Below, piece by piece: positions 2,102 to 37,314 of a stretch of DNA of 64,000 nucleotides. This DNA is from Mobula hypostoma (Eukaryota). A model generated the notes under the pieces. That model made no database searches and had not been told where the DNA came from. It saw nothing but the letters and a program-made list of their open reading frames with translations. The stretch is from assembly GCF_963921235.1 (NCBI RefSeq), contig NC_086117.1, forward strand, positions 16,616,001-16,680,000, in the 5' to 3' direction. Each line of letters opens with the position of its first letter. The first letter of the stretch is position 1. The position numbers and the translations under genes are program-made.

Positions 2102-4594
2102 TTATACAAGGTTGTCCAGTTTGGGATATGATGCCTTGTTGGGGATTATTAGTCTGACATCCAGAGGAGCCTCCTGGTTGGACATCAGATTTGCTTTGAC
2201 CGGCATAGGAAGTGTCTCGGATAAGAATTCATCTATTATCAGACCACTATGTTTCAGTTTGCTACACTGTCCAATTTCCACGGGAAGTTCTTCCAAAGGA
2301 TTCCCTTTGAGTTCCAGTTTTGAAAGTAGGGAGCATTGTTGAATCTTTCCACTAAGGGAGGTAAGTAAATTATTGTTCAGCTTTAGAGTCTTGAGCTTCC
2401 TACATTGGAACAACTCATCTGGTAAAGTTTCCAACTTATTGGAGCTCAGATCTAGAAATGTAAGGTACTTGAGGTTTTTAATAGATGTGGGAATGGCCAT
2501 TAGACGGTTGTTACTCAAGTACAGATGATGTAGCTTCTGAATAGCAAATAAACTATTTGGTAGGGTCTCAATCTGATTGTCTGATGCATTAAATTGTTCA
2601 AGGTTGCCGATGAAAAGAAAGGAATCTGGAAGGGAAGTAATTTTGTTGTTACTGAGATTGAGGGAGGACAGTCTTGGTAGTTGCCGGAAAGCTTCAAGTT
2701 CATCCACTTGTCTGAGTTCATTTCCCTGGAGGTTCAATTCTTGCAGATTGGTGAGGCTAAAAATGCCGTGGGGTATATTGTCCAGCTGACAGTTTTGAAG
2801 GTCAAGTCGAGCTAAGTTGAACATGCCCCCCAAATTGTGGAGCACTTCAAGCTTGTTCTTATTATTAAAAATTGACAGCCCTATCAAATGGGGAGCCACA
2901 TACAACACGTTGAAGGGTATCTTTGTGAGGTTGCTATTGATTCGAAGGATTTTCAAATAACGAAGTTCTTTTAAGAATTCTAGTTCCAATGTTTTAGTTT
3001 CTAAATTAATGTTTCCAATCAAGAAAAGCTCTCTGAGTCGGGTCAGTTTATTGATCCATTCAGGCACCTCCTCATGAACCGAAAAAGTGACCAGAAGCGA
3101 ATGCAATTTGTTGCCTAGAAAGAATAAAGCAGTTGGTTTAACGACGACTTTGCAGTTTACAATCGAAAGTTCTTCCAAGTGGATAAGGTGAGTTACCTTG
3201 GAACTTATCTTAATATCAGTGCACAGTTCCATCCTTAAGGCCTGTAACTCAGTCACGTCGTAGACCGCCTGAGGAATTCCTGTTAACATGAAGAGTTGAA
3301 GTTCCAGCTGCTCCTTGTTATTTTGGATTAATTGCTGTCTTACCTTGTCCACAGTCCAGTCGTTATTCAAATTTAACATCTTCAACTTTTTCTCACTTGC
3401 CTCGGACAGGAAGATGCAGAAGCGTGTGCAGTACAGGGGGTCATACTGATCGATCAGATGTAACAAGAAAGCAAAATCGTTCTTTACATTAGGAATGTCG
3501 CTGAACTGGGTTTCACGTTTCTCGAATGAATATTGTTTCAGGGGTGACCTCAAGATCCAGATGAGGGTGCGAAGACAAAGCCCCACATAAATGGTTACCA
3601 AAATCAGATAGAGCAGGATGAGCCTCTGCAACAGAAGGGCGATGCTAAATGTGCAAATAAAAATCTCGTAACCAATCACATTCTCCATGCCGGGGCGACA
3701 TATAATGTCAAAGTTGACATCTTTAATGAATACCATAAAATAACAAAGGATCGCTAAGCACTGCAGGGATTTAAAAACCATTTGTCCAACATAGAGTTTA
3801 TATATGGTGTCCTCTTGCTCTACATGAAACCTGAACTTTCTCACTTTCTCAAACAGGGATTTGGCTTGTTCTCCATCCTTCTTGTCCAGTAATTGGAACT
3901 GCTTCTTTATAACAGACTGCGTCCGTGTTGAGCTTTTAGCAGATTCGCTGATACCTTGGCCTGCCACTGTGCTTTTACGTTTCTCTTGCGCCCGGGTGTT
4001 CATTTCGCTGCTGTTCTCTGTGACGGCCAGAGAGAGGACTTCGGTTGTCCAGGGGGAATCGAAGCACTTCTCCAAGATGAAGACCAGATGCTCTATTTTG
4101 GAGCTTGTTTTGGGATACTTGAACCAGAAATTGCTGCAAATCATCAACGCAACAGTATGGATAAGTATGAAAGAGGAAAAGTGCTTAGAAAACCAGGGAA
4201 CAGCGTGGAAATAACATGCCTGGTTGACATAGCGATACTGTTGATAATCCAAATTTGCCTTGGTGTGTTCAACAGCAAAGATGGCATTTACCCGTGATAT
4301 TTTAATGGATTTTTGATTAATTATTGTATGATGTAAATCGGTTATATTAAAATCAACATGTTTATCTGCCCAGCTTATGTTAGCATCAATAGGTGATGGA
4401 GCACTGTGAGTGGAATTAGCTTTAATTGGTAAACAAATTGTCCTATCCTTGTATATTTGCATGGTGCCCCCAAACACAGCGATCATCAACATGGTCATTG
4501 CCAAATAATCCATGAAGGTATCCCACCATGGTTTGAAGATCCGGAAGGATGGAGGAGATCTAGTTACTGAAGATATTTCTTCCAAGCTGAACAT
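2102..4594 (-). CDS. Divergent LRRC8D-like volume-regulated anion channel subunit (830 aa, single coding exon)
   Basis: Uninterrupted ORF with pannexin-like TM region (KPWWD, SNFWFKYP, SPWTT, LDKKDGEQAK, DIPNVKNDFAFLLHLIDQYDPLY) and a C-terminal LRR domain. D-like traits: N-terminus MFSLEEISS (D: MFTLAEVAS), FMDYL, NLDxQQY, no C57/C65 pair, no coding intron. Splice acceptor (ctctgtgtttag|AA ATG) lies 2 nt before the ATG. Confidence 0.93.
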   Translation of the reverse strand: MFSLEEISSVTRSPPSFRIFKPWWDTFMDYLAMTMLMIAVFGGTMQIYKDRTICLPIKANSTHSAPSPIDANISWADKHVDFNITDLHHTIINQKSIKISRVNAIFAVEHTKANLDYQQYRYVNQACYFHAVPWFSKHFSSFILIHTVALMICSNFWFKYPKTSSKIEHLVFILEKCFDSPWTTEVLSLAVTENSSEMNTRAQEKRKSTVAGQGISESAKSSTRTQSVIKKQFQLLDKKDGEQAKSLFEKVRKFRFHVEQEDTIYKLYVGQMVFKSLQCLAILCYFMVFIKDVNFDIICRPGMENVIGYEIFICTFSIALLLQRLILLYLILVTIYVGLCLRTLIWILRSPLKQYSFEKRETQFSDIPNVKNDFAFLLHLIDQYDPLYCTRFCIFLSEASEKKLKMLNLNNDWTVDKVRQQLIQNNKEQLELQLFMLTGIPQAVYDVTELQALRMELCTDIKISSKVTHLIHLEELSIVNCKVVVKPTALFFLGNKLHSLLVTFSVHEEVPEWINKLTRLRELFLIGNINLETKTLELEFLKELRYLKILRINSNLTKIPFNVLYVAPHLIGLSIFNNKNKLEVLHNLGGMFNLARLDLQNCQLDNIPHGIFSLTNLQELNLQGNELRQVDELEAFRQLPRLSSLNLSNNKITSLPDSFLFIGNLEQFNASDNQIETLPNSLFAIQKLHHLYLSNNRLMAIPTSIKNLKYLTFLDLSSNKLETLPDELFQCRKLKTLKLNNNLLTSLSGKIQQCSLLSKLELKGNPLEELPVEIGQCSKLKHSGLIIDEFLSETLPMPVKANLMSNQEAPLDVRLIIPNKASYPKLDNLV

Positions 4595-5212
4595 TTCTAA
4601 ACACAGAGGATAAATAACATTATTTATTAGAATTGATTCTCAAAGTAAAGCCTGTATCAGTAGCCAAATTTTGAATAGGGTGGTTAAAAAAAAAATCAAG
4701 AACATCATTGAAATGGAGAAATTTGATACTTGCGACACCTTTATCTGAAATACTGTCAGGTTCTGCAAGGTACTGATTGACAGACTTCTGTAAAGACCAT
4801 TACAGCCACGAATACCATTTTATACAGGGCTTTAAACTAATAAAACATCTATTGTTTGAAGTCCCAATGAAGTAACAAAATACAACATCTCAAGCCACAA
4901 ATACTTCAAGGACTGGTTGATGAAAGTCTTGCTGAAAATATATAAGCTGTTGTTGTTGCTTTCTTTTCATGCCTTGTGGCGCATCGGGTGGCATTTTTGC
5001 TGTTTCTGTAGCACTGGAGTTGCTAGCTCAATGCTCAACCCTCAATCCAGCATGGATGGAAAGCTGCATCCAGATTTGATCTCAGGACCTTTTACTTCAA
5101 AGTCTGGTGCTGATGCCACTACACCATCAGCTGGCTATGTAAGCTGTTAGTAAGACCACAATTGGAGTACAGTTTTGACCTTGTTAAAATGAAATGGAAG
5201 GTTCATTAGACT

Positions 5213-6206
5213 CGCAAACATGAGGAAATCTGCAAATGCTGGAATTTCAATCAACACACATAAAAGTTGCTGGTGAACGCAGCAGGCCAGGCAGCATCTA
5301 TAGGAAGAGGTACAGTCGACATTTTGGGCCGAGACCCTTCGTCAGGTACAGTCGATGTTTCGGGCCGAGACTCTTCGTCAGGACTAACTGAAAGAAGGGC
5401 TAGTAAGAGATTTGAAAGTGGGAGGGGGAGGGGGAGATCCGAAATGATAGGAGAAAACAGGAGGGGGAGGGATGGAGTTAATAGCTGTACAGTTGATTGG
5501 CAAAAGGGATATGAGAGGATCATGGGACAGGAGGCCCAAGGAGAAAGAAAGAGGGAGGGGGAAGCCCAGAGGATGGGCAAGGGGTATAGTGAGAGGGACA
5601 GAGGGAGAAAAAGGAGAGAGAGAAAAAGAATGTGTGTGTATATAAATAAATAATGGATGGGGAACAAGGGGGAGGTGGGGCATTAGCGGAAGTTTGAGAA
5701 GTCAATGTTCATGCCATCAGGTTGGAGGCTACCCAGACGGAATATAAGGTGTTGTTCCTCCAACCTGAGTGTGGCTTCATCTTTACAGTAGAGGAGGCCG
5801 TGGATAGACATATAAGAATGGGAATGAGACGTGGAATTAAAATGTGTGGCCACTGGGAGATCATGCTTTCTCTGGCGGACAGAGCGTAGGTGTTTAGCGA
5901 AATGATCTCCCTGTCTGCGTCGGGTCTCGCCAATATATAGAAGGCCGCATCGGGAGCACCGGACGCAGTATATCACCCCAGCCGACTCACAGGTGAAGTG
6001 TCGCCTCACCTGGAAGGACTGTCTGGGGCCCTGAATGGTCGTGAGAGAGGAAGTGTAAGGGCATGTGTAGCACCTGTTCCGCTTACAAGGATAAGTGCCA
6101 GGAGGGAGATTGGTGGGGAGGGTTGGGGGGGACATCTTTCTCTCCCCCCCTTTGCTTTCCGCAGGGATTACTCTCTACGCGACTCTCTTGTCCATTTGTA
6201 CCCCCC
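5213..6206 (-). mobile_element. Penelope-like retroelement (PLE), 3' part with GIY-YIG endonuclease and pseudo-LTR; inverted 5' segment at about 6133-6206
   Basis: ORF 5683-6135 contains CxxxxCxxC...FTCESAGVIYCVRCSRCGLLYIGET...HF (PLE GIY-YIG). The terminus is shared with copies at 6.7, 10.6, 23.1, 28.9, 33.7 and 61.8 kb. Confidence 0.85.
5308..5385 (-). ncRNA. Tandem pair of minimal type I hammerhead ribozyme motifs (36-bp duplication) in the PLE terminus
   Basis: Minus strand reads AGUC-CUGACGA-AGAGUCUCGGCCC-GAAA-CA-UC-GACU, then GUAC-CUGACGA-AGGGUCUCGGCCC-AAAA-UG-UC-GACU. Stem I is AGUC/GACU. The second core has G12->A. Confidence 0.65.
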
Positions 6207-6736
6207 AATATGTCAATATGTCTATGTCTACAAGAAGTGGGAAGAATTTACCTGAACCTAGTGATAAAGGTAATGGGAAAGGAAAGGTGCAAAAGGAAAG
6301 ATCTGATGAAATGCCATCGTGGGCTGAAGATATCGTTCGGACACTGAATTCAATTAAGGATCAGAATGGATCAATTAAAGACCAACTGGAAAAGAATAGT
6401 AATGAAATGAAGTCATTTCTGGGAAAACTTAAAGACCTGGAAACTCAAGTTATTTCACACGAAGAGGAATTGAAGATAACTAAGCAAAAGTTGTCTGAAG
6501 CTATAACTCGTTTGGAAAGATATCAAAATAAGATTATAGACCTGGAAACTAAGTCTCGACAAAGGAATATAAGAATTGTTGGGCTGCAGGAAGGAGCTGA
6601 AGATGGAGATTTAACGGCTTACTTTGGTAAGCTTTTCCACACTTTATTTCCTACCATTCTATCAAAGCCGCCTGCTATAGAAAGGGCACACAGGGCGTTT
6701 ATCTCCAAATTGAAGGATTCTAGTAAACCAAGATCT

Positions 6737-6770
6737 GTCCTGACGAAGGGTCTCGGCCTGAAACGTCGAC
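6737..6770 (+). ncRNA. Minimal type I hammerhead ribozyme motif with intact core
   Basis: GUC-CUGACGA-AGG(GUCUCGG)CCU-GAAA-CG-UC-GAC. Stem I is GUC/GAC, stem II is AGG/CCU, and stem III is palindromic ACGU. Predicted cleavage follows GUC at 6767. Confidence 0.75.
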
Positions 6771-6867
6771 TGCACCTCTTCCTATAGATGCTGCTTGGCC
6801 TGCTGCGTTCACCAGCAACTTTGATGTATGTTGCTTGAATTTCCAGCATCTGCAGAATTCCTGTTGT
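6737..6867 (+). mobile_element. Short PLE terminus inserted in L1 ORF1
   Basis: Reverse-complement match to 5213-5345. It splits L1 ORF1 SKPRSV|LVCFHHF, with CTG repeated at both junctions. Confidence 0.85.
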
Positions 6868-9800
6868 CTGGTTTGCTTTCATCACTTTAAAATTAAAGAT
6901 CAAATAATACGACAGGCAAGAAAACAGAGAGTTTTTAGATTTATGGAGTCTGAGCTCCGCTTCTACGAAGATTATCCAAGAGAGATAATGGAACAAAGAT
7001 CAAAATTTGCCCTGGTAATGAAACAAGCATATGATAGGAATCTTTTCCCATCTTTGAGGTATCCAACAAGATTTAAAATTCCCCCCCCAATTCTCCTCCT
7101 CGTACTTTTTTTTGATCCAAAAGCTGCACTGGATTTTGTTCAGGTTTTACCTGCCGCTGTCACAGACACCACTGTTGAATGATCCATCTGAAAGGCTGTT
7201 TGGCTATTTGTATATTATTCACATTTTGGAAAGAATATTTATGAAGGTCACTTGTATATTTCATCGAGAGACTAATTAAAGAACACAGGGAGTTGTTCTT
7301 TATTGCATATTATTGGTTTTCCTTTGGAAAGATTTATGGTTTAAGTATCTCTGCTCAAATGATCTCTGGACATTTTATGACTGAGGGAAGAAGATAAAGC
7401 GACTTGTTCCTTTAATTTAATACTTCATAGCTAATTGGTAGTTTTTCCTACTAATAGGGCTTTTTATATATTTTTCTGTTTTATTATAACATTTTATAAT
7501 TGAATTTAAAGCTTTTTTAGGGAATTAATATTAAACTTAAACATGGCGCTGGTTTTTCTCTCTAAGAGATGACATTATCTTGGTTCTTTCTTGTTTATCA
7601 GTCGATGGAATGTAAATTCCTTTTTTTGCTGAGACTTTATTGTCTTTTTCACAAGGTTACTCTACTTTTTTACTAACTGGGGGGAGGGAAAGAAAACACA
7701 GACAGAGCAGTCAGTAGCTTTGAATTCTATCGTAGATCGCTTGCCCTTTTCGGGTTTCCGGGTGTGGGTGGGTGGGTTTAGAGTTAGTTTTTTCCCATTG
7801 GGTGGTTCCGGAGCATGCGTGTTTTTTATTTGGTTGTATTCTTCATCACTGCCATCTTTGATCATCCTGCATTGGTATGTGCTTTGTGCATGCATAAAGT
7901 AGAATGAAATTATAGTATGCTGTTCAAACGGATTAATATAGTAAGTTGGAATGTACGTGGTTGGAATCATCCTATTAAACGAAAGAAGACTTTTAAAATT
8001 TTTAACCGATTCCAACCTGATATAATTTTTGCTCAAGAGACACATATCAGGGCGGGAGATCAAAATAGATTTTTTAGATGGTGGGATGGTTTGCAATTCC
8101 ACTCTACTTCTCAGAGTAAAACAAAAGGCGTGTCTATTTTCATTAAACCTAATATATTTATTCAAGAGGATATTGAATCAGATTCTAATGGTAAATTTTT
8201 AATTGTTAAAGGAACAATCTGTAACAGAAAAGTTGTTTTGGTTAATTTGTATGGTCCTAACTTAGATGATCCTTCTTTTTTTAAAAAGGTATTTGCTTTA
8301 CTGCCTGACTTAAATGAATATATTCTCATAATGGGTGGAGATTTTAATTGTTGTTTAAATCCTATGATTGATAAGAGCTCAACCAATCAGCGACTTCCAA
8401 ATCGATCTGCGTCATTTATTAACTCCTTTTTGATTGATTTTGGGTTGATTGATTTGTGGAGGTATCTTCATCCTGACTATAGAGAATATTCTTTCTTCTC
8501 ACACGTTTATAAAAAATATTCGAGGATCGATTATATTATAAGCGATCCCCGCTTCTTGTCTAGTGTTAAAACTTGCGAATATGACGCTATTGCTATATCT
8601 GATCATGCGCCTCTGAGTTTGTCTTTTGAATTTGATAATGTCACTCTTGTCCACCCACCTTGGCGCATGTCTCAGACATTATTGCAAAACTCTGACTGTC
8701 ACTTTCATTGAAACCCAGATAAAAGAATTTTTTTCTTTTTAATGATATAGGGGGTATGTCTAAATTAGTTATATGGGATACATTTAAAGCATTTTTACGT
8801 GGTCAGATTATTTCTTATTCAGCTAAGCTTAAAAAACAAACTAAAGCAGAATTATATAGAATTTCAAAACAAATTAAAGACTTAGATAATATTTATGCAA
8901 TTTCCCCCAATACTGATTTATTTAAACAAAGGGTGGAACTTCAATCACAATATAACCTGTTATTAACTCATCCCATTGAAGGTTATTTGCTTAAGTTAAA
9001 GAGTCAATTTTGTATGTCTGGAGATAAAAATAATAAACTGCTTGCATCTCAATTAAAAATGGCAGCAGCCAAAAGGCAAATCATGAAAATTCGTAGGAAA
9101 GATGGTACCTTAGCTCAGGAATATGAGGAAATTAATAAGATTTTTCAAGACTTTTATGCTCAGCAATATAAATCTCAATGTCCATTAGATTCCTCTAAAA
9201 TGAATGCTTTTTTATGAAAGATTGTTTTTCCTAAAATCTTGGCTGAGGATCAAAAGGTTCTCGATGCTCAAATTACTGAAGCCGAAATTCATAAAGCTAT
9301 TTTTTCAATGCAATCTGGTAAGTCCCCAGGACTTGATGGCTACCCCGTAGAATTTTATTAAAAATTTGGAAAGTTGCTCTCTCTGTATATGTTGGAAATG
9401 TTTAAGGATTCTTTTGTGAAAGGTGACTTACTCTCTACTTTTTATGAGGCCTCTATTTCTTTAATTTTAAGATAAAGATCCTACTGACTGTGCTTCATAT
9501 AGACCTATTTCATTACTGAATGTTGACGCTAAGATTTTGTCAAAGATAATGACCAATCGGTTGGAGAATATTTTGGGTAAAATTATTTGTAAAGATCAAA
9601 CAGGCTTTATAAAGGGTCGCTATTCGGAGACTACTTAACATTATATATTCATCCTCTTCTAAAATTCCACAATGTGTTGTATCTTTGGATGCTGAAATAG
9701 CGTTCTGCTCCTATATCTTATGGTCTTAATAGTGTGAAAATGGGTGCTCGATATATCCGCAGTGTGCTGAAGGAGCAATTTCTGCTCTGTATCTCTTTCT

Positions 9801-10445
9801 AACTACGATACTACAAACACAAATTTAGGAATTAATTCTTGTATTTTGAGACATAATTTACCTTCTGGAGTTTATCCCTTCTTCTTGCCTTTCCACTCAT
9901 GTGTTCTAGCTCTTGTGTTCCTATGGGTGCCTGCAGCCTTCAGATACCTCAACTGCAAGAAAATTCTCATCAGTGAATGTCCACAAACTTTAGCTTTAGT
10001 GACAATTCACTCAAACCAGTTACTAGCTTTTCAACACTAAACCTGCTCTCATTGTCTCTGCTCAGGAAAAATAAAAGCTGAAAGCTGATTTATGTCCAAA
10101 CTTCACTCTAACAATTGTAAGAGGCTTCTTAATGTTTATATACGTACAGCTTGGTGTACCCTTGTTCCTGCTTCCCGCCTCAGAGAAGTGCCTTGAAGGA
10201 TACAGTGGATTGTACTTGTTTCTGTTATTCATTACAGTATGTCACAGAACAGATTGGAACCTACAGCTCTGTCCATTTATGAGGGAACTCACAGTAGGTT
10301 CCAAGACTTGCTATGTATAAGAATGTCTTTTGTGATGTTTATGGAATATCCATTTTTTTTTTTAGCATTTTGAGAAAGAACTAGTGTCATTATGATCTGT
10401 CTTAGACAAGGCATGATTATGTCACTATATTAATGGAATTAATGA

Positions 10446-10573
10446 GTGTGTCACCAGCCGGGAGAGCCTGAAATGCAGATCATCTTCTTCTTCTTCTTCT
10501 TCTTCTTTTATGGGTGCCAATCACCAAAGAAGAAGAAGATCTGCATTTCAGGCTGTCCTGGCTGGTGACACAC
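10446..10573. repeat. Inverted repeat / hairpin with a (TTC)n-(GAA)n inner stem
   Basis: 36-bp arms GTGTGTCACCAGCC...AAATGCAGATC with 2 differences enclose (TTC)n and (GAA)n tracts. Confidence 0.85.
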
Positions 10574-11088
10574 ACAGAGTGCTGGAGGAACTCAGCAGGC
10601 CAGGCAGTCTCTATGGAAAAGAGTACAGCTGATGTTTCAGGCCGAGACCCCTCAGCAGGACTGGAGAAAAAAAGATGAGGAGTAGAGTTAAAAGGAGAGG
10701 GGAAGGGAGGGATAAACACAAGGGGATGGGTGAAACCGGGGGAGGGGGAGGGGTGCAGTAAGGAGCTGGGAAATTGATTGGTGAAAGAGTTACAGGGCTG
10801 GAGAAGGGGAAATCTAATAGGAGAGGAGAGAAGGAAGAAAGAAAAGAGGGGAGGAGCACTGGAGGGAGGTGATGGACAGGCAAGAAGATGAGAGAGGGAA
10901 AAGGGGATGGGGAATGGTGAAGGGTGGGGTGGGGGAGCATTACCAGAGGTTTGAGAAATTGATGTTCATGTCATCAGCTTGGAGGCTACCCTGACAGAGT
11001 ATATAGTGTTGTTCCTCCAACTTGAGTGTGGCTTCATCATGACGGTAGATGAGGCCATGCATAGGCATATTGGAGTGGGAATGGGAAG
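10570..11088 (-). mobile_element. PLE 3' fragment (GIY-YIG tail plus terminus, degenerate hammerhead at 10626-10663)
   Basis: Homologous to 5255-5830. The hammerhead core is mutated to CUGCUGA. Confidence 0.8.
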
Positions 11089-11199
11089 GTACTTACAAGA
11101 TAGGTAGCTTCTCATCGTCTCATGTTATATTTGAACTTGGGTCTCCAAAGTAACTCCTCAGGGTCTCAGTTTTAATTACTAGCTTTTTTCGTCTACATC

Positions 11200-28301: not shown

Positions 28302-28577
28302 TCAGGCTTGTTCCTTTTCTGCTCGGCACAGCTGCTCTTTGACGTCTGATGGGAGTGTGTTGAAGAGATCGTCCTCCACCACAAGGGCACTTCTTTTGAG
28401 TAGCCTGCACTCTCCAAGCTCCACAGGGAGGCATTCTAGTCGGTTCCCGCGAAGTTCCAGTTGCGTCAAACTGGTCAACTCTCCAACCCGTGACTGTAGT
28501 GATAGCAAGCAGTTATTCCCCAGATTTAGAGTCCGGAGTTTGCGACACTGGAAGAGTTCGGGTGGCAGGGTTTCAAT
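28302..28577 (-). CDS. LRRC8A: LRRC8A coding exon 2, residues 720-810 plus stop
   Basis: Acceptor cccattttacag|ATT GAA ACC CTG CCA CCC gives IETLPPELFQCRKLRTLNLGNN...LCRAEKEQA*. The exon is 276 nt, and the spliced total of 810 aa equals human LRRC8A length. Confidence 0.96.
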   Translation of the reverse strand: METLPPELFQCRKLRTLNLGNNCLLSLQSRVGELTSLTQLELRGNRLECLPVELGECRLLKRSALVVEDDLFNTLPSDVKEQLCRAEKEQA

Positions 28578-28893
28578 CTGTAAAATGGGAGGAGGATCAA
28601 AGGAAAAGGGAAGAAAAATTTTAGCTGCAGCAATTGTTGGACTGAGCTAGCATTTAAGAAGCACTTTCAAAATAAAGCTTTACATTCACAGAGTATTGAA
28701 AATTTATTGTTAACTCTGTAGGTTTAACATTTATTTGATGTTCGAAATTTAAACACAATTGCAACACCGGTTAATGTCACATAATGGCTTAATGTTTTAA
28801 CAACAAAAGATTAACCTTTAATCTGAAGGCAAACTTAAAAGAATTCTACAGTCATAAGGACAGATAACACTATAAAACATAGGAGTAGAATTA

Positions 28894-29083
28894 CAAACAA
28901 GAGAAAATCTGCAGATGCTGTAAATCCAAGCAACACACACTAAATGCTGGAGGAACTCAGCAGGCCAGCAGCATCTACGGAAGAGAGTACAGTCAACGTC
29001 TCCGCCCAAAACGTTGGCTGTACTCTTTTCCATAGATGCTGCCTGGCCTGCTGAGTTCCTTCAGCATTCTGTGTATGTGTTGC
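28894..29083. mobile_element. Palindromic PLE-terminus insertion with 13-14 bp TSD, inside a CR1 tail
   Basis: Arms at about 28929-28999 and 29011-29084. TSD TAGGAGTAGAATTA at 28880-28893 and 29084-29097. Confidence 0.85.
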
Positions 29084-30043
29084 TAGGAGTAGAATTAGGC
29101 CATTTGGCCCAGAGTCTGCTCTGATATTTCATCATAACTGATTTATTTCCCTTCTCAAATATATTCTTCTGCCTTTTCCCCGTAACTTTAGATGCCCTGA
29201 CTAATCTAGAACCTAACAATATCTGCTTTAAAAATACCCGATGATTTAGCTTCCACAGCCATCTGTGGCAACGAATTCCACAGATTCACCACCCTCTTGG
29301 CTGAAGAAGTTTCTCCCCATCTCTGTTCTAGAGGGACGTCCTTGTATTCTGAGGCTGTGCTCTCTGATCATAGACCCCCCCCCCACCCCACCACCACCAC
29401 AGGAAATGTCCTCTCCATGCCCACTCTATCTGGGCTTTCAAATTTGGATGTTTTCCTTGTAGCACTGGAGTCTGAGTGGTGACCTTAGAGAGGTTTATAA
29501 AATCATGAGTGGCACAGGTAAGGTGATGGTCACAGTGCTTTTCCCCAGGGTAGGGGAGTCTAAAACTAGAGGACATAGGTTGAAGCTGCGAGGGAAAGGT
29601 TTATAAGGCTCAAGCAAGGGTGGTAGATACAACAAACTAGAGCAAGCGTTGAAGGCTGGTACAATTACGTTTTAAAAAGATTTGGACAGCATCATGCATA
29701 AGAAAGGTTTAGAAGGATATGGACCAAATGCAGGCAAACACTTCGGCTTTGATCAGTAGGGATGTGTTGGGCCGAAGGGCTAGTTGCTGTGTTATAATGA
29801 CTATGAGTCACACGGCAGTAAGTGTGCCTTGAGCCCTGGAGTTTTGGGTTCAGTCCTGACCTTAGGTACATGGATTCCGAAGACGCTCTTTGTAAGTGGT
29901 AGGCTTCAATTTTCCCACCCATTCTACCTTTGCATAATTAAGTTACTGCAGATTGCCCCTACTGTAGGCAAAAGGTACCAATGGAGAGTTAATGAGTACG
30001 TGAGAAAAAGGGCTGGAGAGGGAATGAAACAGTTGAGACTGTC

Positions 30044-33000
30044 CATAGAAACCATAGAAACTACAGCACAGAAACAGGCCCTTCGGCCCTTCTTGGCTGT
30101 GCCGAACCATTTTCTGCCTAGTCCCACTGACCTGCACATGGACCATATCCCTCCATACACCTCCCATCCATGTATCTGTCCAATTTATTCTTAAATGTTA
30201 AAAAAGAACCCGCATTTACCACCTCATCTGGCAGCTCATTCCATACTCCCACCACTCTCTGTGTGAAGAAGCCCCCACTAATGTTCCCTTTAAACTTTTC
30301 CCCCCCCTCACCCTTAACCCATGTCCTCTGGTTTTTTTCTCCCCTTGCCTCAGTGGAAAAAGCCTGCTTGCATTCACTCTATCTATACCCATCATAATTT
30401 TATATACCCCTATCAAATCTCCCCTCATTCTTCTACGCTCCAGGGAATAAAGTCCTAACCTATTCAACCTTTCTCTGTAACTGAGTTTCTCAAGTCCCGG
30501 CAACATCCTTGTAAACCTTCTCTGCACTCTTTCAACCTTATTTATATCCTTCCTGTAATTTGGTGACCAAAACTGAACACGATACTCCAGATTCGGCCTC
30601 ACCAATGCCTTATACAACCTCATCATAACATTCCAGCTCTTATACTCAATACTTCGATTAATAAAGGCCAATGTACCAAAAGCTCTCTTTACGACCCTAT
30701 TTACCTGTGACGACACTTTTAGGGAATTTTGTATCTGTATTCCCAGATCCCTCTGTTCCACTGCACTCCTCAGTGCCTTACCATTAACCCTGTATGTTCT
30801 ACGTTGGTTTGTCCTTCCAACGTGCAATACCTCACACTTGTCAGTATTAAACTCCATCTGCTATTTTTCAGCCCATTTTTCCAGCTGGTCCAAGTCCCTC
30901 TGCAGGCTCTGAAAACCTTCCTCACTGTCTACTACACCTCCAATCTTTGTATCATCAGCAAACTTGCTGATCCAATTTACCACATTATCATCCAGATCAT
31001 TGATATAGATGACAAATAACAATGGACCCAGCACTGATCCCTGTGGCACACCACTAGTCACAGGCCTCCACTCAGAGAAGCAATTCTCTACCACCACTCT
31101 CTGGCTTCTTCCATCGAGACAATGTCTAATCCAATTTACCACCTCTCCATGTATACCTAGCGACTGAATTTTCCTAACTAACCTCCCAAGCGGGACCTTG
31201 TCAAAGGCCTTACTGAAGTCCATGTAGACAATATCCACTGCCTTCCCTTCATCCACTTTCCTGGTAACCTCCTCGAAAAACTCCAACAGATTGGTCAAAC
31301 ATGACCTACCACGCACAAAGCCATGTTGACTCTCCCTAATAAGCCCCTGTCTATCCAAATGCTTGTAGATTCTGTCTCTTAGTACTCCCTCCAATAATTT
31401 ACCTACTACTGACGTTAAACTCACCGGCCTATAATTTCCTGGATTACTTTTCGATCCTTTTTTAAACAACGGAACAACATGAGCCACTCTCCAATCCTCC
31501 GGTACTTCACCCGTAGACAGCGACATTTTAAATATTTCTGCCAGGGCCCCCGCAATTTCAATACTAGTCTCCTTCAAGGTCCGAGGGAACACTCTGTCAG
31601 GTCCCGGGGATTTATCCACTTTAATTTTCCTCAAGACAGCAAGCACCTCCTCCTTTTCAATCTGTACAGTTTCCATGGTCTCACTACTTGTTTTCCTCAA
31701 TTCCATAGATTTCATGCCAGCTTCCTTAGTAAATACAGACGCAAAAAACCTATTTAAGATCTCCCCCATTTCCTTTGGTTCCGCACAAAGCCGACCACTC
31801 TGATCTTCAAGAGGACCAATTTTATCCCTTACAATCCTTTTGCTCTTAATATACTTGTAAAAGCTCTTTGGATTATCCTTCACTTTGACTGCCAAGGCAA
31901 CCTCATGTCTTCTTTTAGCCCTCCTGATTTCTTTAAGTATTTTCTTGCACTTCTTATACTCCTCAAGCACCTGATTTACCCCCTGTTTCCTATACATTTC
32001 ATACAACTCCCTCTTCTTCTTTATCAGAGTTGCAATATCCCTCGAGAACCAAGGTTCCTTATTCCTATTCAATTTGCCTTTAATCCTGACAGGAACATAC
32101 AAACTCTGCACTCTCAAAATTTCCCTTTTGAAGGGTTCCCACCTACCAATCACATCTTTGCCAGAGAACAACCTGTCCCAATCCACACTTTTTAGATCCT
32201 TTCTCATTTCTTCAAATTTGGCCTTCTTCCAGTTCAGAACCCCAACCAGATCTATCCTTGTCCATGAACAAATTGAAACTAATGGTGTTATGATCACTGG
32301 AACCAAAGTGCTCCCCTACACAGACTTCTGTCACTTGCCCTAATTCGTTTCCTAACAGGAGATCCAATATTGCATCCCCTCTAGTTGGTCCCTCTATATA
32401 TTGATTTAGAAAACTTTCCTGAACACATTTTACAAACTCTAAACCATCTAGACCCCTAACAGTATGGGAGTCCCAATCAATGTATGGAAAATTAAAATCC
32501 CCTACCACCACAACTTTATGTTTCCTGCAGTTGCCTGCTATCTCTCTGCAGATTTGCTCTTCAAAGTCTCGTTGACTATTGGGTGGTCTGTAATACAATC
32601 CCACTAACGTGGCCGTACCTTTCCTGTTTCTCAGCTCCACCCATAAGGACTTAGTAGACAAGCCCTCTAATCTGTCCTGCCTGAGCACTGCTGTAATATT
32701 TTCCCTAACAAGCAATGCTACTCCCCCACCTTTCATTCCTCTGCCTCGATCACACCTGAAACATCTGAACCCCGGAATATTAAGCTGCCAGTCCTGCCCC
32801 TCCTGTAGCCAAGTTTCACTAATTGCTACAACATCATAATTCCACGTGTCAATCCACGCCCTCAACTCATCCGCCTTCCCCGCACTACTCCTAGCATTGA
32901 AATATATACACCTCAGAAGATTTTTACCACCACTCACAACCTTTCTATCAGCGGATTTGCTTAAACTTTCAACATCATTTATTTTCACCCCAGCCACACT

Positions 33001-33537
33001 GTCAGCTCTGGCACTCTGGTTCCCATCCCCCTGCAAATCTAGTTTAAAGCCTCCCCAATAGCACTAACAAATCTCCCTGAAAGGATATTGGTCCCCCTGT
33101 GGTTCAAGTGTAGCCCGTCTCTCTTGTACAGGTCCCACCTGCCCCAGAAGAGGTCCCAATGATCCTGAAATCTGAAACCCTGCCCCCTACACCAGTTCCT
33201 CAGCCACTTGTTCCTCCTCCAGAGCATCCTATTCCTACCCTCACTGGCACCTAGCACAGGTAGCAATCCTGAGATTACCACCCTTGAGGTCCTGCTTTTC
33301 AACTTTCTACCAAGCTCTCTATACTCACTGTCCAGGACCTCTTCACTCTTCCTTGCTATGTCATTGGTACCGATGTGCACCACGACATCTGGCTGGTCAC
33401 CCTCCCACTTCAGAATGTCATGCAATCGATCAGAGACATCCTTGACCCTGGCACCTGGGAGGCAACAAACCATCCTGGATTCTCTGTCACGACCACAGAA
33501 CCTTCTATCTGCACCTCTAACTATCGAGTCCCCTATC
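30044..33537 (-). mobile_element. Young CR1-clade LINE with SGNH-esterase ORF1 fragment and nearly complete ORF2, in the LRRC8A coding intron
   Basis: ORF1 33039-33539 (IGDSIVRG, HIGTND, DGLHLN). ORF2 pieces 32212-33036 (endonuclease), 30861-32306 (RT) and 30216-30857. Candidate TSD ACTGTC at 30038-30043 and 33538-33543. Confidence 0.93.
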
Positions 33538-33662
33538 ACTGTCTGCCAGAAGCTGGTAATAGACTCAATGTCACAATCTGCATAAGAACATGGAAATAAT
33601 GAACTGACTTAATCATAGCTCTGGCTACCATCTGCAGTAATCAAATCAAACATAGATCAGGG

Positions 33663-33828
33663 AAACACAGAAAATACTGCAGGAACTCAGCAGGTCAGGC
33701 TAAACGTTTCAGGCTGAGACCCTTCATCCTTTTATTATTCCCCTCCATAGGTGCTACCTAGCTTGCTGAGTTCCTCCAGCATTTCCTGTGTTGCTCTGAA
33801 TTTCCAGCATCTGCAGAATCACGTGTTT
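33663..33828. mobile_element. Palindromic PLE-terminus element (degenerate)
   Basis: GGAACTCAGCAGG...GCTGAGTTCC inverted arms, with a truncated hammerhead remnant at the turn (33703-33728). Confidence 0.7.
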
Positions 33829-34214
33829 AAAAATATACCAGGTCTGAGTGAAGCGCAGAGTAACTGTAAGGCAGAACAGCTACTGGAAGCCTGAGAGGAA
33901 ACATCCATAATGTCTTTGAGTTCTTAACGTAAACTAATGTTGCTTCAAGGCAAACAACAGCAGGCCTTAACAGTAATTGCATATTGAAACTTGAACTCAA
34001 GGTATCAGACGTCAACTCTCAATAATTAACTTTGTGTATCAATTTAATGACAGAAAATCTGTATAGCAAATATATTTATGAGACAAATATTATGAATACC
34101 CACAAAGATGTTTACACTGACTCATAGGGCAATTTGAAAAACAATGTTAATAACAGGCAGAGGAGAGCAAATGGATAAAAATGTAAAAGAGAAAAATTGA
34201 ATATGCATACTCAC

Positions 34215-36371
34215 TCTGTTCGCAGTGACCGCAAAATATTGCAGATTCTGTAGGTAACCAATGTCCTGTGGAATGGAGGTTAGGTTGTTATGACTCAAAT
34301 CTAAATACCGTAATTTGCGGCAGTAGAAGAACTGTGTGGGAATCTTTTCAATCTTGTTTCGGTTCAAGTAGAGCCTTTCCATGTTGTTCAAAGTGCCAAT
34401 CTGAATAGGGATGTAGGCAATGTGGTTATACCACAGCTTAAGGCAGACCAGGTGCCGCAAGTGCTGGAAACTGATTATTTCCTCGATTGTCTTCAAATTG
34501 TTGTCTTTGAGATCGATCTCCTGCAAGTTATGGAGACTGAAGATTGAGTGCGGGATTCGTTCTAAATCACAGCGAATCAACTCCAATTCTGTCAGATTAA
34601 CCATTTTCTTCAGACTATTGAGGACCATCAGCTTGGTACCCTCGTTATTGATCGACAATTTCTGTAGATGAACACCAACATCTGTAACAACCTGCGGCAG
34701 CTTAGTCAAGTTGCTCTTTAGCCTCAGAACTTTGAGACATTTGAGATCCCGCAAGCCATCAATTACAATGTAGCGGTTATTTTCTGCACTCAGATTCCCA
34801 GTTAGATGAAGCTCTTCAAGGTTCTTCAGGCTGTAGATCCACAGGGGAATCTCTTTGATGTCTGTAAACTTGATGTGCAACGACTTCAGGTGCTCACGCA
34901 AGAAGGCTAGAGCTGGTGCCTCAATCTTTGCCGGTGTGTGGTACAACCAGAGTTCTTTGAGGTTGGCAAGCTGGGCAATGATTGGGGGAATGGTGACGTC
35001 CAGGATCATCTCTAGTTTGAGCACTTCCAATTCAGTCAAGTCAAAGATGGTGTCTGGAATTCCACTCAGCATGAAGAGGTGGAGTTCCAGTTTATCTTGG
35101 GAGTTTTTCATGATCCTCTGCCGGAGTTTTTCCAGGGTCCACTCATTATTCAGATTGAGCTGACGCAACTTGTTCTCACTGACCTCAGACAAAAAGACAG
35201 CAAAACGTTTCGAGTACAGTGGATCATACTGATCAATCAGGTGCAGCATGAAAGCAAAGTCATTCTTAACATCAGGAATATCACTATAGCTACTCTCCTC
35301 CCTGATGGACTCAAATGAATATTTCTTCAATGAACGCCGGAGCATCCACCAAAGTGTGTACATGCAAATGAGTCCATAAACAATCACTAAACTAATATAA
35401 AATGATGCCAGGATTTTGAACAAGGTGGCTAATGGATGAGCACACTGATACACGCGGTATCCTGTGAGGTTCTGAATATCCACAATACAAGGCACATCAA
35501 ATTTTATATCATCAACATAATAAAGTGAGTAACTAATAATAAGTGCGAATTTGATTACTTTGATAATAGTCTGTCTCATGTAGAGTTGGTAAACTATATC
35601 TCCTTCCTCTACATGAGTGCGGAATTTCTTTACTTTTTCAAAAAGGGCCTTAGCTTGCTCTCCTTCCTTTTTATCCAGTACTCCTGTCTCTGAGCGATCA
35701 ACTATCCCCTGTTCAATGCGTGATTTTGTTCTCTGCAACATGGGTACGCTGGCCTCCACGTCCTCACTTGCGGAAGAAGATTTCTTTGCCATTGAGCCAT
35801 TCATTTTAACAAATGACTGTTTTGGGTCACTTTCCTCAACCACAGTTTCGGATAGTGCTCGTGTTGTCCATGGTGAGTCAAAGCATTTAAGGAGGATAGA
35901 TACAAAATGTTCTAGCTTTGAGCTCGTCCGAGGATACTTGAACCAGAAATTACTACACACCAAGAATACTAGTGTGTGCAGAAGTACAAGGTATGGGAAG
36001 TATTTTGCAAACCAGTGAAGTTTAGTCTCATAGCACACTGCATCCACATAATTGTACTGGTGCCGATCCAAGTCATATTGGATGCCCGTGGGCTCGTCAG
36101 AAAACGGGGGAAAGACTGAAGGCCGAGGGAGGGATCCATTTGGATAATCTATTATTGGCGGTTGTGCAGGTTCTCGACATGTATTGTTTGAAACCCATTT
36201 GCAGGGTAAACAGATCATTTTGTCTTGTGTGACCTGCAATGTGCCCCCAAACACTGCTATCATAAGCATTACAATGGAGATGTAGTCCGTAAACACGTCC
36301 CACCATGGCTTCAAGATTCGGTAAGCAGGCTGGGTGTCGGCAAAATATCGCAGTTCTGTTACTGGAATCAT
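34215..36371 (-). CDS. LRRC8A: LRRC8A (SWELL1) coding exon 1, residues 1-719
   Basis: MIPVTELRYFADTQPAYRILKPWWDVF...YDLDR103HQY...VTANR is very similar to mammalian LRRC8A. Acceptor ttttcag|GTGCGTG ATG (exon starts 36378). Phase-0 donor AGA|GTGAGT at 34215/34214. CDS portion is 2157 nt. Confidence 0.97.
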
Positions 36372-37314
36372 CACGCACCTGAAAATTAACAGAAATAAAT
36401 TATGGTAGGTATTCTTATTACTAACTAGAAAATTAATTATGGACATTGTATAGCTTATGTTACTCTTAAAACTTAGATATTTTGGCCACCATATAGCAGC
36501 TCATTGGCCAATCAGATTCCCCACTAACTGGATCACCTGGGTAAGACCTATCTGGCTATAATGAGAATGCACAAACTCCACACAATTAACACTGGTAATC
36601 GGGTTTCAACCTGGAGCTGTGAAGTTGCAACTGTTCTAGTTGTGCTACTGAACACCCATACTGTACACCCACACACCCAGCGAAAACTAGAAAGACTACT
36701 TTTGATTGTATACAGGGCAGCAATAATGATAAAGGCCTGTTCCTTGTGCTACTGGAAGCAAGTTGAGGAATATTAGAACATAATAAACTGGAACAGTAAT
36801 CAATGGTCCCTCTAGCCCACTCTTCAACCTAAAAAAAACCCTTACTTGATATTCTTGGTGTAATCTCACTAAGATTCCTTTATACGATTGCAACGAGACA
36901 GCCCTACCCTTTTACTCACATTCTCTAATAATAAAGGCCAATATATTTTTCCATATCGTACTTCATCCACCATGTTGTCCACATCTGCAATTTATCTACA
37001 TCTCCTTCAATTCTCTTTGCATCTTCAACACTACTCGCCAAGTTACAATCCATGCAGTAGCCTACTACTGAGTTCTTGCTAACCCAAGAAGGGCTTATTT
37101 ATTCCTACTTTGTGTTTTCCATTTGCTCAGCAACTCTCATTTAACGTAGCAAAATACCCCTAATCAATGTCCAGCATCTTCTGGGTGGGACCTTATCAAA
37201 AACCTTCTGAAGATCCAAATACACCACATCCAACAATCCCTCCAAACACACCACATCCCTTTTGTTTACTTTACCAAAAATACTTTCAAAGAACTCTAAC
37301 AGATTTATCAAATA

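What the first reader, a model, noticed from the sequence alone, without database searches (positions are those of the whole stretch)
2102..36378. LRRC8A followed by an extra, divergent LRRC8D-like subunit: candidate non-mammalian VRAC paralogue
Seen: an intact 830-aa LRRC8 ORF lies downstream of and co-oriented with a bona fide LRRC8A. It has D-type architecture (single coding exon, acceptor 2 nt before the ATG, no C57/C65 pair) but looks far more diverged from mammalian LRRC8D than the neighbouring LRRC8A is from its orthologue. Known: in human, LRRC8B-C-D are a tandem on 1p22, while LRRC8A (9q34) and LRRC8E (19p13) have no LRRC8 neighbour. LRRC8A is the obligatory subunit, and LRRC8D widens permeability to organic osmolytes such as taurine. 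Inference: A->D-like here is the whole-genome-duplication counterpart of the C->D tandem, retained in this lineage and lost next to human LRRC8A. It could give elasmobranchs, which rely on urea, TMAO and amino-acid osmolytes, an additional VRAC heteromer. An extra non-mammalian paralogue may already be named in the literature, which I cannot check.
Basis: partly seen in the sequence, partly recalled or inferred. Interest (0 to 1): 0.8.

Follow-up and report, generated by a model that had tools for sequence, protein, structure and literature searches.

The report
Unnamed ancient LRRC8 paralogue beside LRRC8A
Just downstream of the essential volume-regulated anion-channel gene LRRC8A, this manta/devil-ray genome carries an intact, apparently transcribed, fast-evolving D-type LRRC8 gene from an old paralogue lineage found in every cartilaginous fish sampled and in no bony-vertebrate protein found, so the textbook "five LRRC8 subunits" does not hold for all vertebrates.

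Summary
Window 2102-4594 (-) is an intact 830-aa, single-coding-exon LRRC8 gene, called G1 here. It lies 23.7 kb downstream of a complete LRRC8A (810 aa, 88% identical to dog) and in the same orientation.

G1 is not an LRRC8D orthologue. In an ML tree it pairs with a second chondrichthyan-only group (G2), outside canonical LRRC8D, which Mobula also has on another chromosome. An AU test rejects a chondrichthyan-specific origin from LRRC8D (p=0.002).

The order LRRC8A -> G1 -> G2 -> PHYHD1-like gene is seen whole in elephant shark, and its parts in Mobula and a sevengill shark. No bony-vertebrate orthologue appeared in two large protein searches. Cod LRRC8A has no LRRC8 neighbour.

G1 looks functional. 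The ORF is intact in all ten chondrichthyan proteins found, pairwise dN/dS is 0.12-0.40, and contigs in three related species end exactly at the acceptor. It evolves about seven times faster than LRRC8A, and its pore-constriction residue is not fixed.

A role as a VRAC subunit partnering LRRC8A is inferred, not shown. Databases call it "LRRC8D-like", and I found no paper describing it.

The parts
2102..4594 (-). G1: complete single-exon coding sequence (830 aa plus stop) of a D-type LRRC8 paralogue
   Evidence: ORF and translation. Pfam PF12534 E 4e-111 plus LRR families. 99% identical to M. birostris 'LRRC8D-like'. Best solved relatives are LRRC8D chains (792 bits), ahead of LRRC8A (706) and LRRC8C (697).
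4595..4612 (-). G1 3' splice site: polypyrimidine tract and AG acceptor 2 nt upstream of the ATG. The 5'UTR exon or exons lie further upstream and were not located.
   Evidence: Sequence. Contigs of runs X1, X3 and X4 stop aligning at 4595/4598/4594 and carry 31, 92 and 413 further letters that do not match the intron. The WGS-like run X6 reads through the boundary.
1953..2101 (-). G1 3'UTR (about 150 nt), with a poly(A) signal hexamer starting at 1972
   Evidence: A poly(A) signal motif is at 1972. The deepest transcript-like contig (X3) ends at 1953.
34215..36371 (-). LRRC8A main coding exon (Met1 to Arg719), ending at a GTGAGT donor
   Evidence: Pfam PF12534 E 5e-146.
28578..34214 (-). LRRC8A intron containing a LINE. 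The endonuclease, reverse-transcriptase and GDSL-esterase ORFs span 30216-33539.
   Evidence: Exon ends. Pfam RVT_1, Exo_endo_phos and Lipase_GDSL_2 hits. Strong GC skew.
28302..28577 (-). LRRC8A last coding exon (91 aa plus stop), preceded by a ...TTTTACAG acceptor
   Evidence: The joined protein is 810 aa and 96% identical to catshark LRRC8A.
23800..28301 (-). Probable long LRRC8A 3'UTR (inferred from conservation only)
   Evidence: Window 25553-23800 aligns at 69% over 1.9 kb with the skate region upstream of G1. Short matches to the Callorhinchus LRRC8A-G1 spacer fall at 28059-28014 and 24808-24709.
4613..23799 (.). G1 upstream region: first intron, undetected 5' exon(s) and promoter, largely filled with retrotransposon debris
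   Evidence: LINE ORFs at 6095-9217 (+) and 11665-14054 (-). Very high read depth at 5200-6000. Conserved blocks shared with skate at 19369-18341 and 10173-9767 are candidate exon or regulatory sequence but remain unresolved.

Best explanation
The 830-aa ORF is a working gene for a D-type member of the LRRC8 (volume-regulated anion channel, VRAC) family. It is one of two tandem paralogues lying between LRRC8A and a PHYHD1-like gene in cartilaginous fishes. G1 is in this window. G2 is about 800 aa and starts about 9.5 kb beyond the window's left edge.

Shown here: the G1+G2 lineage separated from the lineage leading to LRRC8D before cartilaginous and bony fishes diverged. It duplicated in tandem before chimaeras split from sharks and rays. 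It was absent from the bony-vertebrate proteins searched.

Inferred: the lineage is the copy of an ancestral LRRC8 gene cluster that the early vertebrate genome duplications left in the 9q34-type paralogon. In that scheme LRRC8A corresponds to LRRC8B, and G1/G2 correspond to LRRC8D.

Inferred from family membership only: the protein is a pore-forming subunit that joins LRRC8A in swelling-activated channels. It would give them a D-like pore, because it has a non-arginine residue at the outer constriction, a long first extracellular loop and an MF(S/T) N-terminus. Its fast evolution and its unfixed constriction residue suggest a specialised or tissue-restricted role.
For: Identity
- Pfam finds the LRRC8 pore domain plus LRRs.
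- The four structural cysteines (LRRC8A C54, C113, C295, C310) are kept.
- The conservation profile follows the channel's architecture. Mobula vs Callorhinchus identity is 0.80 in the IL2/linker, 0.72 in the N-terminus+TM1 and in TM2, and lowest in EL1 at 0.35.

Not LRRC8D
- The careful ML tree (55 rows, LG+C20 PMSF) gives G1+G2 100/100. A 100/98 branch separates canonical D plus a third D-type group ('Dx') from G1+G2 and all other LRRC8s. The quick 84-row tree has the same topology.
- AU tests reject G1+G2+chondrichthyan D as one clade (p=0.002) and marginally reject G1+G2+Dx (p=0.022).
- Mobula has its own canonical D, P0065, which is 80% identical to bat LRRC8D.

Synteny
- Callorhinchus has LRRC8A -> G1 -> G2 -> PhyH gene within 19 kb.
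- M. birostris has G1 -> G2. M. hypostoma has G2 -> PhyH gene. Heptranchias has G1 -> G2.
- A sheep gene model fuses LRRC8A with a PhyH domain. Cod LRRC8A is followed by cyclophilin and SDR genes.

Distribution
- Hits above about 55% identity to G1 or G2 are all chondrichthyan. They cover ten species for G1 and about eleven for G2.

Constraint
- The ORFs are intact.
- dN/dS is 0.12/0.20 (NG86/YN00) for Mobula vs skate and 0.21/0.40 for Mobula vs sevengill shark.
- pN/pS is about 0.25 against a closer relative's contig.
- Indels in a relative are 15 and 45 nt, in frame, and fall in the variable EL1 loop.

Expression
- Three small runs from three related species have contigs covering only the ORF plus about 150 nt of 3'UTR. 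These contigs stop at the acceptor with unmatched overhangs.
- A WGS-like run covers the intron and the intergenic DNA.
- A poly(A) signal at 1972 fits the contig end at 1953.
Against: - The tree is unrooted, because no invertebrate-chordate LRRC8 or pannexin outgroup was available. D-type monophyly of G1+G2 with D rests on the assumed root and on shared features.
- G1+G2 sit on a long stem (0.89 substitutions per site), so some long-branch pull toward the non-D groups cannot be excluded.
- The three 'RNA' runs are only guessed to be RNA, and their tissues are unknown.
- The residue aligned with LRRC8A R103 / LRRC8D F143 varies among G1 orthologues (F, H, I, I, F, Y, Y). This is unlike every characterised subfamily.
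- No functional, trafficking or co-assembly data exist.
- Bony-vertebrate absence rests on annotated proteins, not on genome searches for pseudogenes.
Confidence: 0.75

Rival explanations
1. The timing differs. The D-type gene had already multiplied by tandem duplication in the pre-duplication vertebrate or chordate ancestor. G1/G2, Dx and D would then be survivors of differential loss, not products of the genome duplications themselves.
For: The tree gives three deep D-type lineages but no dates. In Callorhinchus, canonical D is followed by another LRRC8 gene of A/B type, so cluster order has been fluid. G1 and G2 themselves show that tandem duplication occurs in this family.
Against: The three lineages lie on different chromosomes, each with different neighbours: PHYHD1-like for G1/G2, ZNF326-like AKAP95-family for D, and a DDX39-like helicase for Dx. 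From memory, the human counterparts of these neighbours lie in the 1p22 / 9q34 / 19p13-6p21 paralogy group. The topology ((G1,G2),(Dx,D)) mirrors A versus B and C versus E.
Confidence: 0.15
2. G1/G2 are a chondrichthyan-specific duplicate of LRRC8D that landed beside LRRC8A and then evolved fast. Their deep position in the tree would be a long-branch artefact.
For: The stem is long (0.89) and both groups evolve quickly. G1, G2 and canonical D are almost equidistant at 47-48% identity.
Against: The AU test rejects G1+G2+chondrichthyan D as one clade under a site-heterogeneous model (p=0.002). The copy would have had to insert, co-oriented, exactly where a cluster-duplication model predicts a D-type gene. 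G1 and G2 each contain chimaera and elasmobranch members, so any such event predates the chondrichthyan crown in any case.
Confidence: 0.05
3. G1 is not a conventional LRRC8A partner. It could be a specialised channel or non-channel protein in a restricted tissue. The model is the sperm-specific, fast-evolving LRRC8C2 of herrings, which appears to work without LRRC8A.
For: Nonsynonymous divergence is about 7-fold higher than in LRRC8A (dN 0.32 vs 0.046). The constriction residue is variable, and elasmobranch G1 has an extra acidic residue at N-terminal position 5. Herring LRRC8C2 shows that lineage-specific, rapidly evolving LRRC8 copies can be tissue-specific homomers (PMC13187792).
Against: No tissue data are available. 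The regions that mediate subunit packing and gating in known LRRC8 channels (N-terminus/TM1, TM2, IL2/linker) are the best conserved parts of G1.
Confidence: 0.15
4. G1 is a decaying or functionless copy, i.e. a transcribed pseudogene.
For: It evolves fast and its pore constriction is variable. Two database gene models (sevengill shark, white shark) start at an internal Met.
Against: Full-length ORFs exist in ten species spanning the chimaera-elasmobranch split. dN/dS is 0.12-0.40. Indels are in frame. The sevengill N-terminus is intact in frame upstream of the annotated start, so that truncation is an annotation choice.
Confidence: 0.02

Closest known systems
LRRC8D (human/mouse VRAC subunit; solved structures e.g. 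6m04, 9t5m)
   Same: It is the best-scoring solved relative (792 bits). It shares the pannexin-like pore domain plus LRR domain, the MF(T/S) N-terminus, a single coding exon with the acceptor just before the ATG, an EL1 loop longer than in LRRC8A (63 vs 49 residues), and an aromatic residue (Tyr in Mobula) where LRRC8A has R103.
   Different: G1 is only 47-48% identical to LRRC8D, whereas the ray's true LRRC8D is 80% identical to bat LRRC8D. It falls outside the LRRC8D clade. It lies beside LRRC8A/PHYHD1, not in the canonical LRRC8D locus (ZNF326-like gene downstream in a cichlid, lrrc8c adjacent in zebrafish). Its constriction residue is not conserved among orthologues. It evolves several times faster.
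G2, the second chondrichthyan-only 'LRRC8D-like' gene (e.g. P0027 Mobula hypostoma, P0081 Callorhinchus)
   Same: It is the sister group of G1 (100/100) and its immediate downstream neighbour. It shares derived residues with G1 (Tyr at LRRC8A T48, Phe at L20) and has a similar evolutionary rate.
   Different: It is only 48% identical to G1 and shorter (about 800 aa). Otherwise invariant motifs are altered, for example NFWFK becomes NFCFT or NFYFT, and its constriction residue is Asn, Val or Tyr.
Teleost lrrc8da / lrrc8db
   Same: These are extra D-type genes in non-mammals.
   Different: Both nest inside canonical LRRC8D. Both sit in canonical-type loci: zebrafish lrrc8db is next to lrrc8c (PMC6994961), and a cichlid D gene is followed by a ZNF326-like gene. 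They appear to be teleost-duplication copies of LRRC8D, not orthologues of G1/G2.
Herring LRRC8C2 (PMC13187792)
   Same: It is a lineage-restricted, rapidly evolving but constrained extra LRRC8 gene.
   Different: It is a recent C-type duplicate confined to Clupeiformes with demonstrated sperm specificity. G1 is an ancient D-type lineage with unknown tissue distribution.
'Dx' D-type lineage (sevengill shark P0118, lungfish P0148, gar P0182, bowfin P0163, perch P0155)
   Same: It is another unnamed, deep D-type LRRC8 lineage annotated 'LRRC8D(-like)'.
   Different: It is sister to canonical D, not to G1/G2. It is present in bony fishes and lies beside a DDX39-like helicase gene.

Membership tests
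LRRC8 / VRAC subunit family | N-terminal pannexin-like four-helix pore domain (Pfam PF12534) | tested here: met
   PF12534 covers residues 1-344 at full profile length, E 4.1e-111.
LRRC8 / VRAC subunit family | C-terminal cytoplasmic leucine-rich-repeat domain | tested here: met
   LRR_8, LRR_4, LRR_14 and LRR_1 hits span about 448-725. The sequence aligns end to end with solved LRRC8A/C/D chains.
LRRC8 / VRAC subunit family | Conserved extracellular cysteines that form the C54-C310 and C113-C295 disulfides of LRRC8A | tested here: met
   All four are aligned and present in every G1 orthologue examined.
LRRC8 / VRAC subunit family | Assembles with LRRC8A into swelling-activated anion/osmolyte channels | not testable with these tools
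   The one complex prediction gave 'no answer' and is not evidence either way. Expression in LRRC8-null cells is needed.
LRRC8D orthologue group | Nests within the clade of LRRC8D from cartilaginous and bony vertebrates | tested here: not met
   It lies outside canonical D+Dx (branch support 100/98). AU p=0.002 against grouping with chondrichthyan LRRC8D.
LRRC8D orthologue group | Conserved locus (LRRC8C/LRRC8D cluster, ZNF326-like gene downstream) | tested here: not met
   G1 lies between LRRC8A and G2/PHYHD1-like gene.
LRRC8D orthologue group | Aromatic residue at the outer constriction (human F143) and an expanded EL1 loop | tested here: inconclusive
   Mobula has Tyr and an EL1 of 63 residues. 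Orthologues have F, H, I, I, F or Y at this position.
D-type LRRC8 in the broad sense (D, Dx, G1, G2) | MF(T/S) N-terminus, whole coding sequence in one exon with the acceptor just before the ATG, closest solved relative LRRC8D | tested here: met
   Monophyly with D depends on where the unrooted tree is rooted.

The most novel reading that the evidence does not exclude
G1 and G2 are two unrecognised LRRC8 subfamilies, in effect 'LRRC8F/G'. In this reading, cartilaginous fishes kept them because they build channels with permeation properties not found in the five mammalian subunits. Examples would be conduits for the urea/TMAO/amino-acid osmolyte system or a tissue-specific (gill, rectal gland, red cell, germ cell) channel, possibly independent of LRRC8A. 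The G1/G2, Dx and D loci together would show that the ancestral vertebrate LRRC8 cluster carried a D-type gene into at least three of the four post-duplication paralogons.
Probability: 0.2. Interest if true: 0.75.

Novelty: new member of a known kind. Interest (0 to 1): 0.5.

Why it matters
VRAC biology is built on five subunits, LRRC8A-E. Reviews and recent papers state that "vertebrates express five isoforms" (for example PMC13187792).

This locus shows that the jawed-vertebrate ancestor had more. A D-type lineage linked to LRRC8A survives as a tandem pair in all cartilaginous fishes sampled. A further D-type lineage (Dx) survives in some sharks, lungfish and ray-finned fishes.

This gives a concrete, testable model for how the family arose: a gene cluster copied by the genome duplications, followed by different losses in different lineages.

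It also offers natural variants of the pore-determining D-type subunit. They come from animals whose cell-volume regulation depends on organic osmolytes. The outer-constriction residue ranges over Tyr, Phe, His and Ile in G1 and over Asn, Val and Tyr in G2. Such variants are useful material for structure-function work on substrate selectivity.

The finding is incremental. It does not overturn the known mechanism: the genes are already in databases as "LRRC8D-like", and no function has been shown.

Tried and rejected
- **Complex prediction.** LRRC8A pore domain (1-412) was tested against G1 (1-418). The verdict was 'no answer', score 0.02, and controls were not run. This is not evidence for or against binding.
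- **RNA runs.** A search for runs on record as RNA-Seq listed none. The first run search gave only runs guessed to be RNA, so no tissue can be named.
- **Saturated dS.** dS is saturated in every comparison with Callorhinchus that involves G1 or LRRC8A. Only elasmobranch pairs gave usable dN/dS for G1.
- **5'UTR exon not found.** I tried to locate the G1 5'UTR exon and promoter by conservation with skate, sevengill shark and chimaera upstream DNA. This gave collinear blocks but no clear exon.
- **Representative search mostly noise.** Beyond the first ~25 rows (down to P0170), the 50%-representative search returned mostly giant LRR proteins, with only scattered LRRC8 fragments further down. It was still useful for finding the Dx members and the E, B and cyclostome sequences.
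- **High-scoring long hits explained.** P0009 (Mugilogobius, 1386 aa) carries an ordinary Da-type LRRC8D in residues 557-1386, and P0012 (Crotalus, 1209 aa) an E-type LRRC8 in residues 1-790; both are over-long gene models. Neither is a bony-vertebrate G1/G2 orthologue.
- **Key paper unavailable.** Abascal & Zardoya 2012, the original LRRC8 phylogeny, is not held. I could not check whether it noted extra chondrichthyan copies.
- **Other look-ups.** The search of earlier findings by words found nothing on LRRC8. The other long ORFs in the window are retrotransposon fragments, not genes.


Full report
**What is in the window**

The minus strand carries two LRRC8 genes in the same orientation.

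The upstream gene is a textbook LRRC8A.
- Its ATG is at 36371. The main coding exon runs to 34215 and ends at a GTGAGT donor.
- A 5.6-kb intron follows and holds a LINE. The LINE's endonuclease, reverse-transcriptase and GDSL-esterase ORFs lie at 30216-33539.
- The last coding exon is 28577-28302.
- The joined product is 810 aa, 96% identical to catshark LRRC8A and 88% to dog LRRC8A.

The downstream gene, called G1 here, is the 830-aa ORF at 2102-4594.
- Pfam finds a full-length LRRC8 pannexin-like pore domain (E 4e-111) and an LRR domain.
- A polypyrimidine tract and an AG acceptor sit 2 nt before the ATG.
- The 23.7 kb between the LRRC8A stop and the G1 ATG holds a probable long LRRC8A 3'UTR and much LINE debris.
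- The window is from a Mobula ray, because the G1 protein is 99% identical to the M. birostris entry 'LRRC8D-like'.

One feature it listed, the missing C57/C65 cysteine pair, is real. It is also missing in LRRC8C and LRRC8E, so it is not diagnostic of the D type.

**There are two such genes, and the arrangement is old**

Homology searches with G1 and with its neighbour show that cartilaginous fishes have three main sets of 'LRRC8D-like' proteins.
- G1: orthologues 56-99% identical, in ten species from Callorhinchus to rays.
- G2: about 800 aa, 61-92% identical among themselves, on the same chromosome as G1.
- G3: 825-856 aa, on another chromosome.

The locus look-ups give the gene order.
- In M. 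birostris the 802-aa G2 gene starts 9.5 kb downstream of G1 on the same strand.
- In M. hypostoma, G2 is followed by a PhyH-domain gene.
- In the compact Callorhinchus genome the whole array LRRC8A (812 aa) -> G1 (847 aa) -> G2 (795 aa) -> PhyH gene fits in 19 kb.
- The sevengill shark has G1 -> G2.

The adjacency is therefore not an assembly artefact. It predates the split between chimaeras and elasmobranchs.

Outside cartilaginous fishes the slot looks empty.
- A sheep gene model fuses LRRC8A with a PhyH domain, which implies direct adjacency. This fits my recollection that PHYHD1 follows LRRC8A on human 9q34.
- Cod LRRC8A is followed by cyclophilin and short-chain-dehydrogenase genes.

**Phylogenetic position**

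I built trees from G1, G2, G3, canonical LRRC8D of bony vertebrates, LRRC8A, B, C and E, hagfish sequences and several odd 'D-like' proteins found by the representative search.

The quick 84-row tree and the careful 55-row tree (LG+C20 PMSF, ultrafast bootstrap/SH-aLRT) agree.
- A+B (with hagfish) and C+E form the non-D half (100/100).
- G3 groups with LRRC8D of coelacanth, tetrapods and ray-finned fishes (98/98), so it is the true LRRC8D. Teleost Da and Db are inside this group.
- A further group, 'Dx', contains sevengill shark, lungfish, gar, bowfin and perch (100/100). It is sister to canonical D.
- G1 and G2 are sisters (100/100). Each contains Callorhinchus plus elasmobranchs. They lie outside D+Dx, on the far side of a 100/98 branch.

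AU tests gave two results.
- Forcing all chondrichthyan D-types (G1+G2+G3) into one clade costs 26.7 log-likelihood units (p=0.002).
- Forcing G1+G2 with Dx is marginally rejected (p=0.022).

There are caveats. The tree is unrooted, and G1+G2 sit on a long stem. Placing them with the D-type half therefore also relies on shared characters:
- the MF(S/T) N-terminus;
- the single coding exon;
- the lengthened EL1 loop;
- the best solved relatives, which are LRRC8D chains at 792 bits, against 706 for LRRC8A and 697 for LRRC8C.

**Origin**

Three deep D-type lineages sit on three chromosomes with different neighbours.
- G1/G2 lie with LRRC8A and a PHYHD1-like gene.
- Canonical D lies with lrrc8c in zebrafish (PMC6994961) and with a ZNF326-like AKAP95-family gene in a cichlid.
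- Dx lies beside a 427-aa DDX39-like helicase gene in perch and bowfin.

From memory, the human counterparts of these neighbours lie at 9q34, 1p22 and 19p13/6p21, a classical four-fold paralogy group.

The D-type topology ((G1,G2),(Dx,D)) parallels A versus B and C versus E. The simplest reading is that an ancestral LRRC8 cluster was copied by the early vertebrate genome duplications. Under this reading:
- the 9q34-type copy kept A and a D-type gene, which duplicated in tandem in the chondrichthyan stem or earlier;
- that D-type gene was lost in bony vertebrates.

In Callorhinchus, canonical D is itself followed by an A/B-type LRRC8 gene, so cluster order has changed over time.

**Is G1 functional?**

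The ORF is full length in all ten species.
- Two database models start at an internal Met.
- In the sevengill shark the N-terminal 28 or so codons and the acceptor are intact in frame upstream of the annotated start.

Pairwise dN/dS was computed by two methods.

| Comparison | NG86 | YN00 |
|---|---|---|
| G1, Mobula vs skate | 0.12 | 0.20 |
| G1, Mobula vs sevengill shark | 0.21 | 0.40 |
| G1, skate vs sevengill shark | 0.15 | 0.31 |
| G2, sevengill shark vs Callorhinchus | 0.17 | 0.29 |

Differences between the window and a closer relative's contig give pN/pS of about 0.25 over codons 611-829.

The gene is fast-evolving.
- dN between Mobula and Callorhinchus is 0.32 for G1 and 0.046 for LRRC8A.
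- Mobula-Callorhinchus protein identity is 58% for G1, 62% for G2, 86% for D and 92% for A.

Conservation along the protein follows the channel's architecture. The IL2/linker, the N-terminus+TM1 and TM2 are best kept, and EL1 is least kept.

There is transcript evidence.
- In three small runs from three related species (about 5% nucleotide divergence), contigs cover only about 1953-4598.
- These contigs stop at the acceptor and carry 31, 92 and 413 further letters that do not match the intron.
- They leave the flanking unique DNA uncovered, whereas a WGS-like run covers it continuously.
- One species has 15- and 45-nt in-frame deletions in the EL1 loop.
- A poly(A) signal at 1972 matches a contig end at 1953.
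- The runs are only guessed to be RNA, and tissues are unknown.

**Likely mechanism**

By family membership, G1 should be a pore-forming subunit that joins LRRC8A in swelling-activated channels. This was not tested.

Several features bear on the pore.
- At the outer constriction, LRRC8A has Arg103, C/E have Leu, and D has Phe or Tyr. Mobula G1 has Tyr, but G1 orthologues have Phe, His, Ile, Ile, Phe and Tyr, and G2 has Tyr, Asn or Val.
- Elasmobranch G1 has Glu at N-terminal position 5, where LRRC8A has the pore-lining Thr5.
- G1 and G2 share Tyr at the position of LRRC8A Thr48.

These features point to a D-like, non-arginine and probably wide pore whose selectivity filter is under weak or shifting constraint. 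Such a pattern would fit a specialised or tissue-restricted role. Herring LRRC8C2, a fast-evolving sperm-specific LRRC8, is a precedent (PMC13187792). A link to urea/TMAO/amino-acid osmolytes is speculation.

A complex prediction returned 'no answer'.

**Novelty**

Full-text searches returned no paper naming an LRRC8F or LRRC8G. In the search that paired LRRC8 with shark, elasmobranch or chondrichthyan terms, none of the 25 listed papers mentioned LRRC8. The 2012 founding phylogeny could not be read. NCBI and UniRef carry these genes as 'LRRC8D-like'.

I class the finding as a new member (subfamily) of a known kind. It is of moderate interest to VRAC and vertebrate-genome evolution specialists.

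Noticed in passing
just beyond window position 1 (M. birostris locus; Callorhinchus L002:15931-18318; Heptranchias L007:19153-21567): A second chondrichthyan-only D-type LRRC8 gene (G2, about 800 aa) follows G1 on the same strand and is itself followed by a PHYHD1-like gene. Its otherwise invariant motifs are altered (NFWFK becomes NFCFT or NFYFT) and its constriction residue is Asn, Val or Tyr.
   Followed up: partly
L006 (Heptranchias), L004 (Perca), L005 (Amia); proteins P0118, P0148, P0155, P0163, P0182: A third deep D-type lineage ('Dx') occurs in sevengill shark, lungfish, gar, bowfin and perch. It is sister to canonical LRRC8D and is annotated merely as LRRC8D(-like). In perch and bowfin it is followed by a 427-aa DDX39-like DEAD-box helicase gene.
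   Followed up: partly
L009:20191-22517 (Callorhinchus): Canonical LRRC8D of Callorhinchus is followed 7.7 kb downstream by an 818-aa LRRC8 gene. Its short first coding exon looks A/B-type (N-terminus MFSVVELKYF...). This does not match the B-C-D order I remember for human 1p22. The rest of the gene lies outside the locus.
   Followed up: partly
proteins P0157 (newt 'LRRC8C-like'), P0159 (Discoglossus 'LRRC8A-like'), P0162 (Lampetra planeri): Three very long-branched LRRC8 proteins cluster together at the base of the quick tree. This is probably long-branch attraction. They may be further lineage-specific divergent paralogues in salamanders, a frog and lamprey.
   Followed up: no
window 5200-6000: Contig depth is enormous in all four runs, above 10^6 in the WGS-like run, with many internal joints. 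This stretch of the G1 first intron is a very abundant short repeat. It overlaps earlier notes about a hammerhead/PLE repeat at 5308-5385.
   Followed up: no
window 30216-33539 (-), 11665-14054 (-), 52247-54846 (-), 6095-9217 (+): There are four LINE-type retrotransposon remnants. The minus-strand copies show strong GC skew. The copy inside the LRRC8A intron has an ORF with a GDSL-esterase domain ahead of the endonuclease and reverse transcriptase. A separate ORF at 50055-50558 (+) hits the ALKBH8_N model.
   Followed up: partly
L007:9850-10000 (Heptranchias): The database G1 model of the sevengill shark starts at an internal Met (MLMIAVFGG...), and so does the white-shark protein. In the sevengill shark the missing N-terminal codons and the splice acceptor are present in frame directly upstream, so that protein is under-annotated, not truncated. 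The white-shark DNA was not examined.
   Followed up: yes
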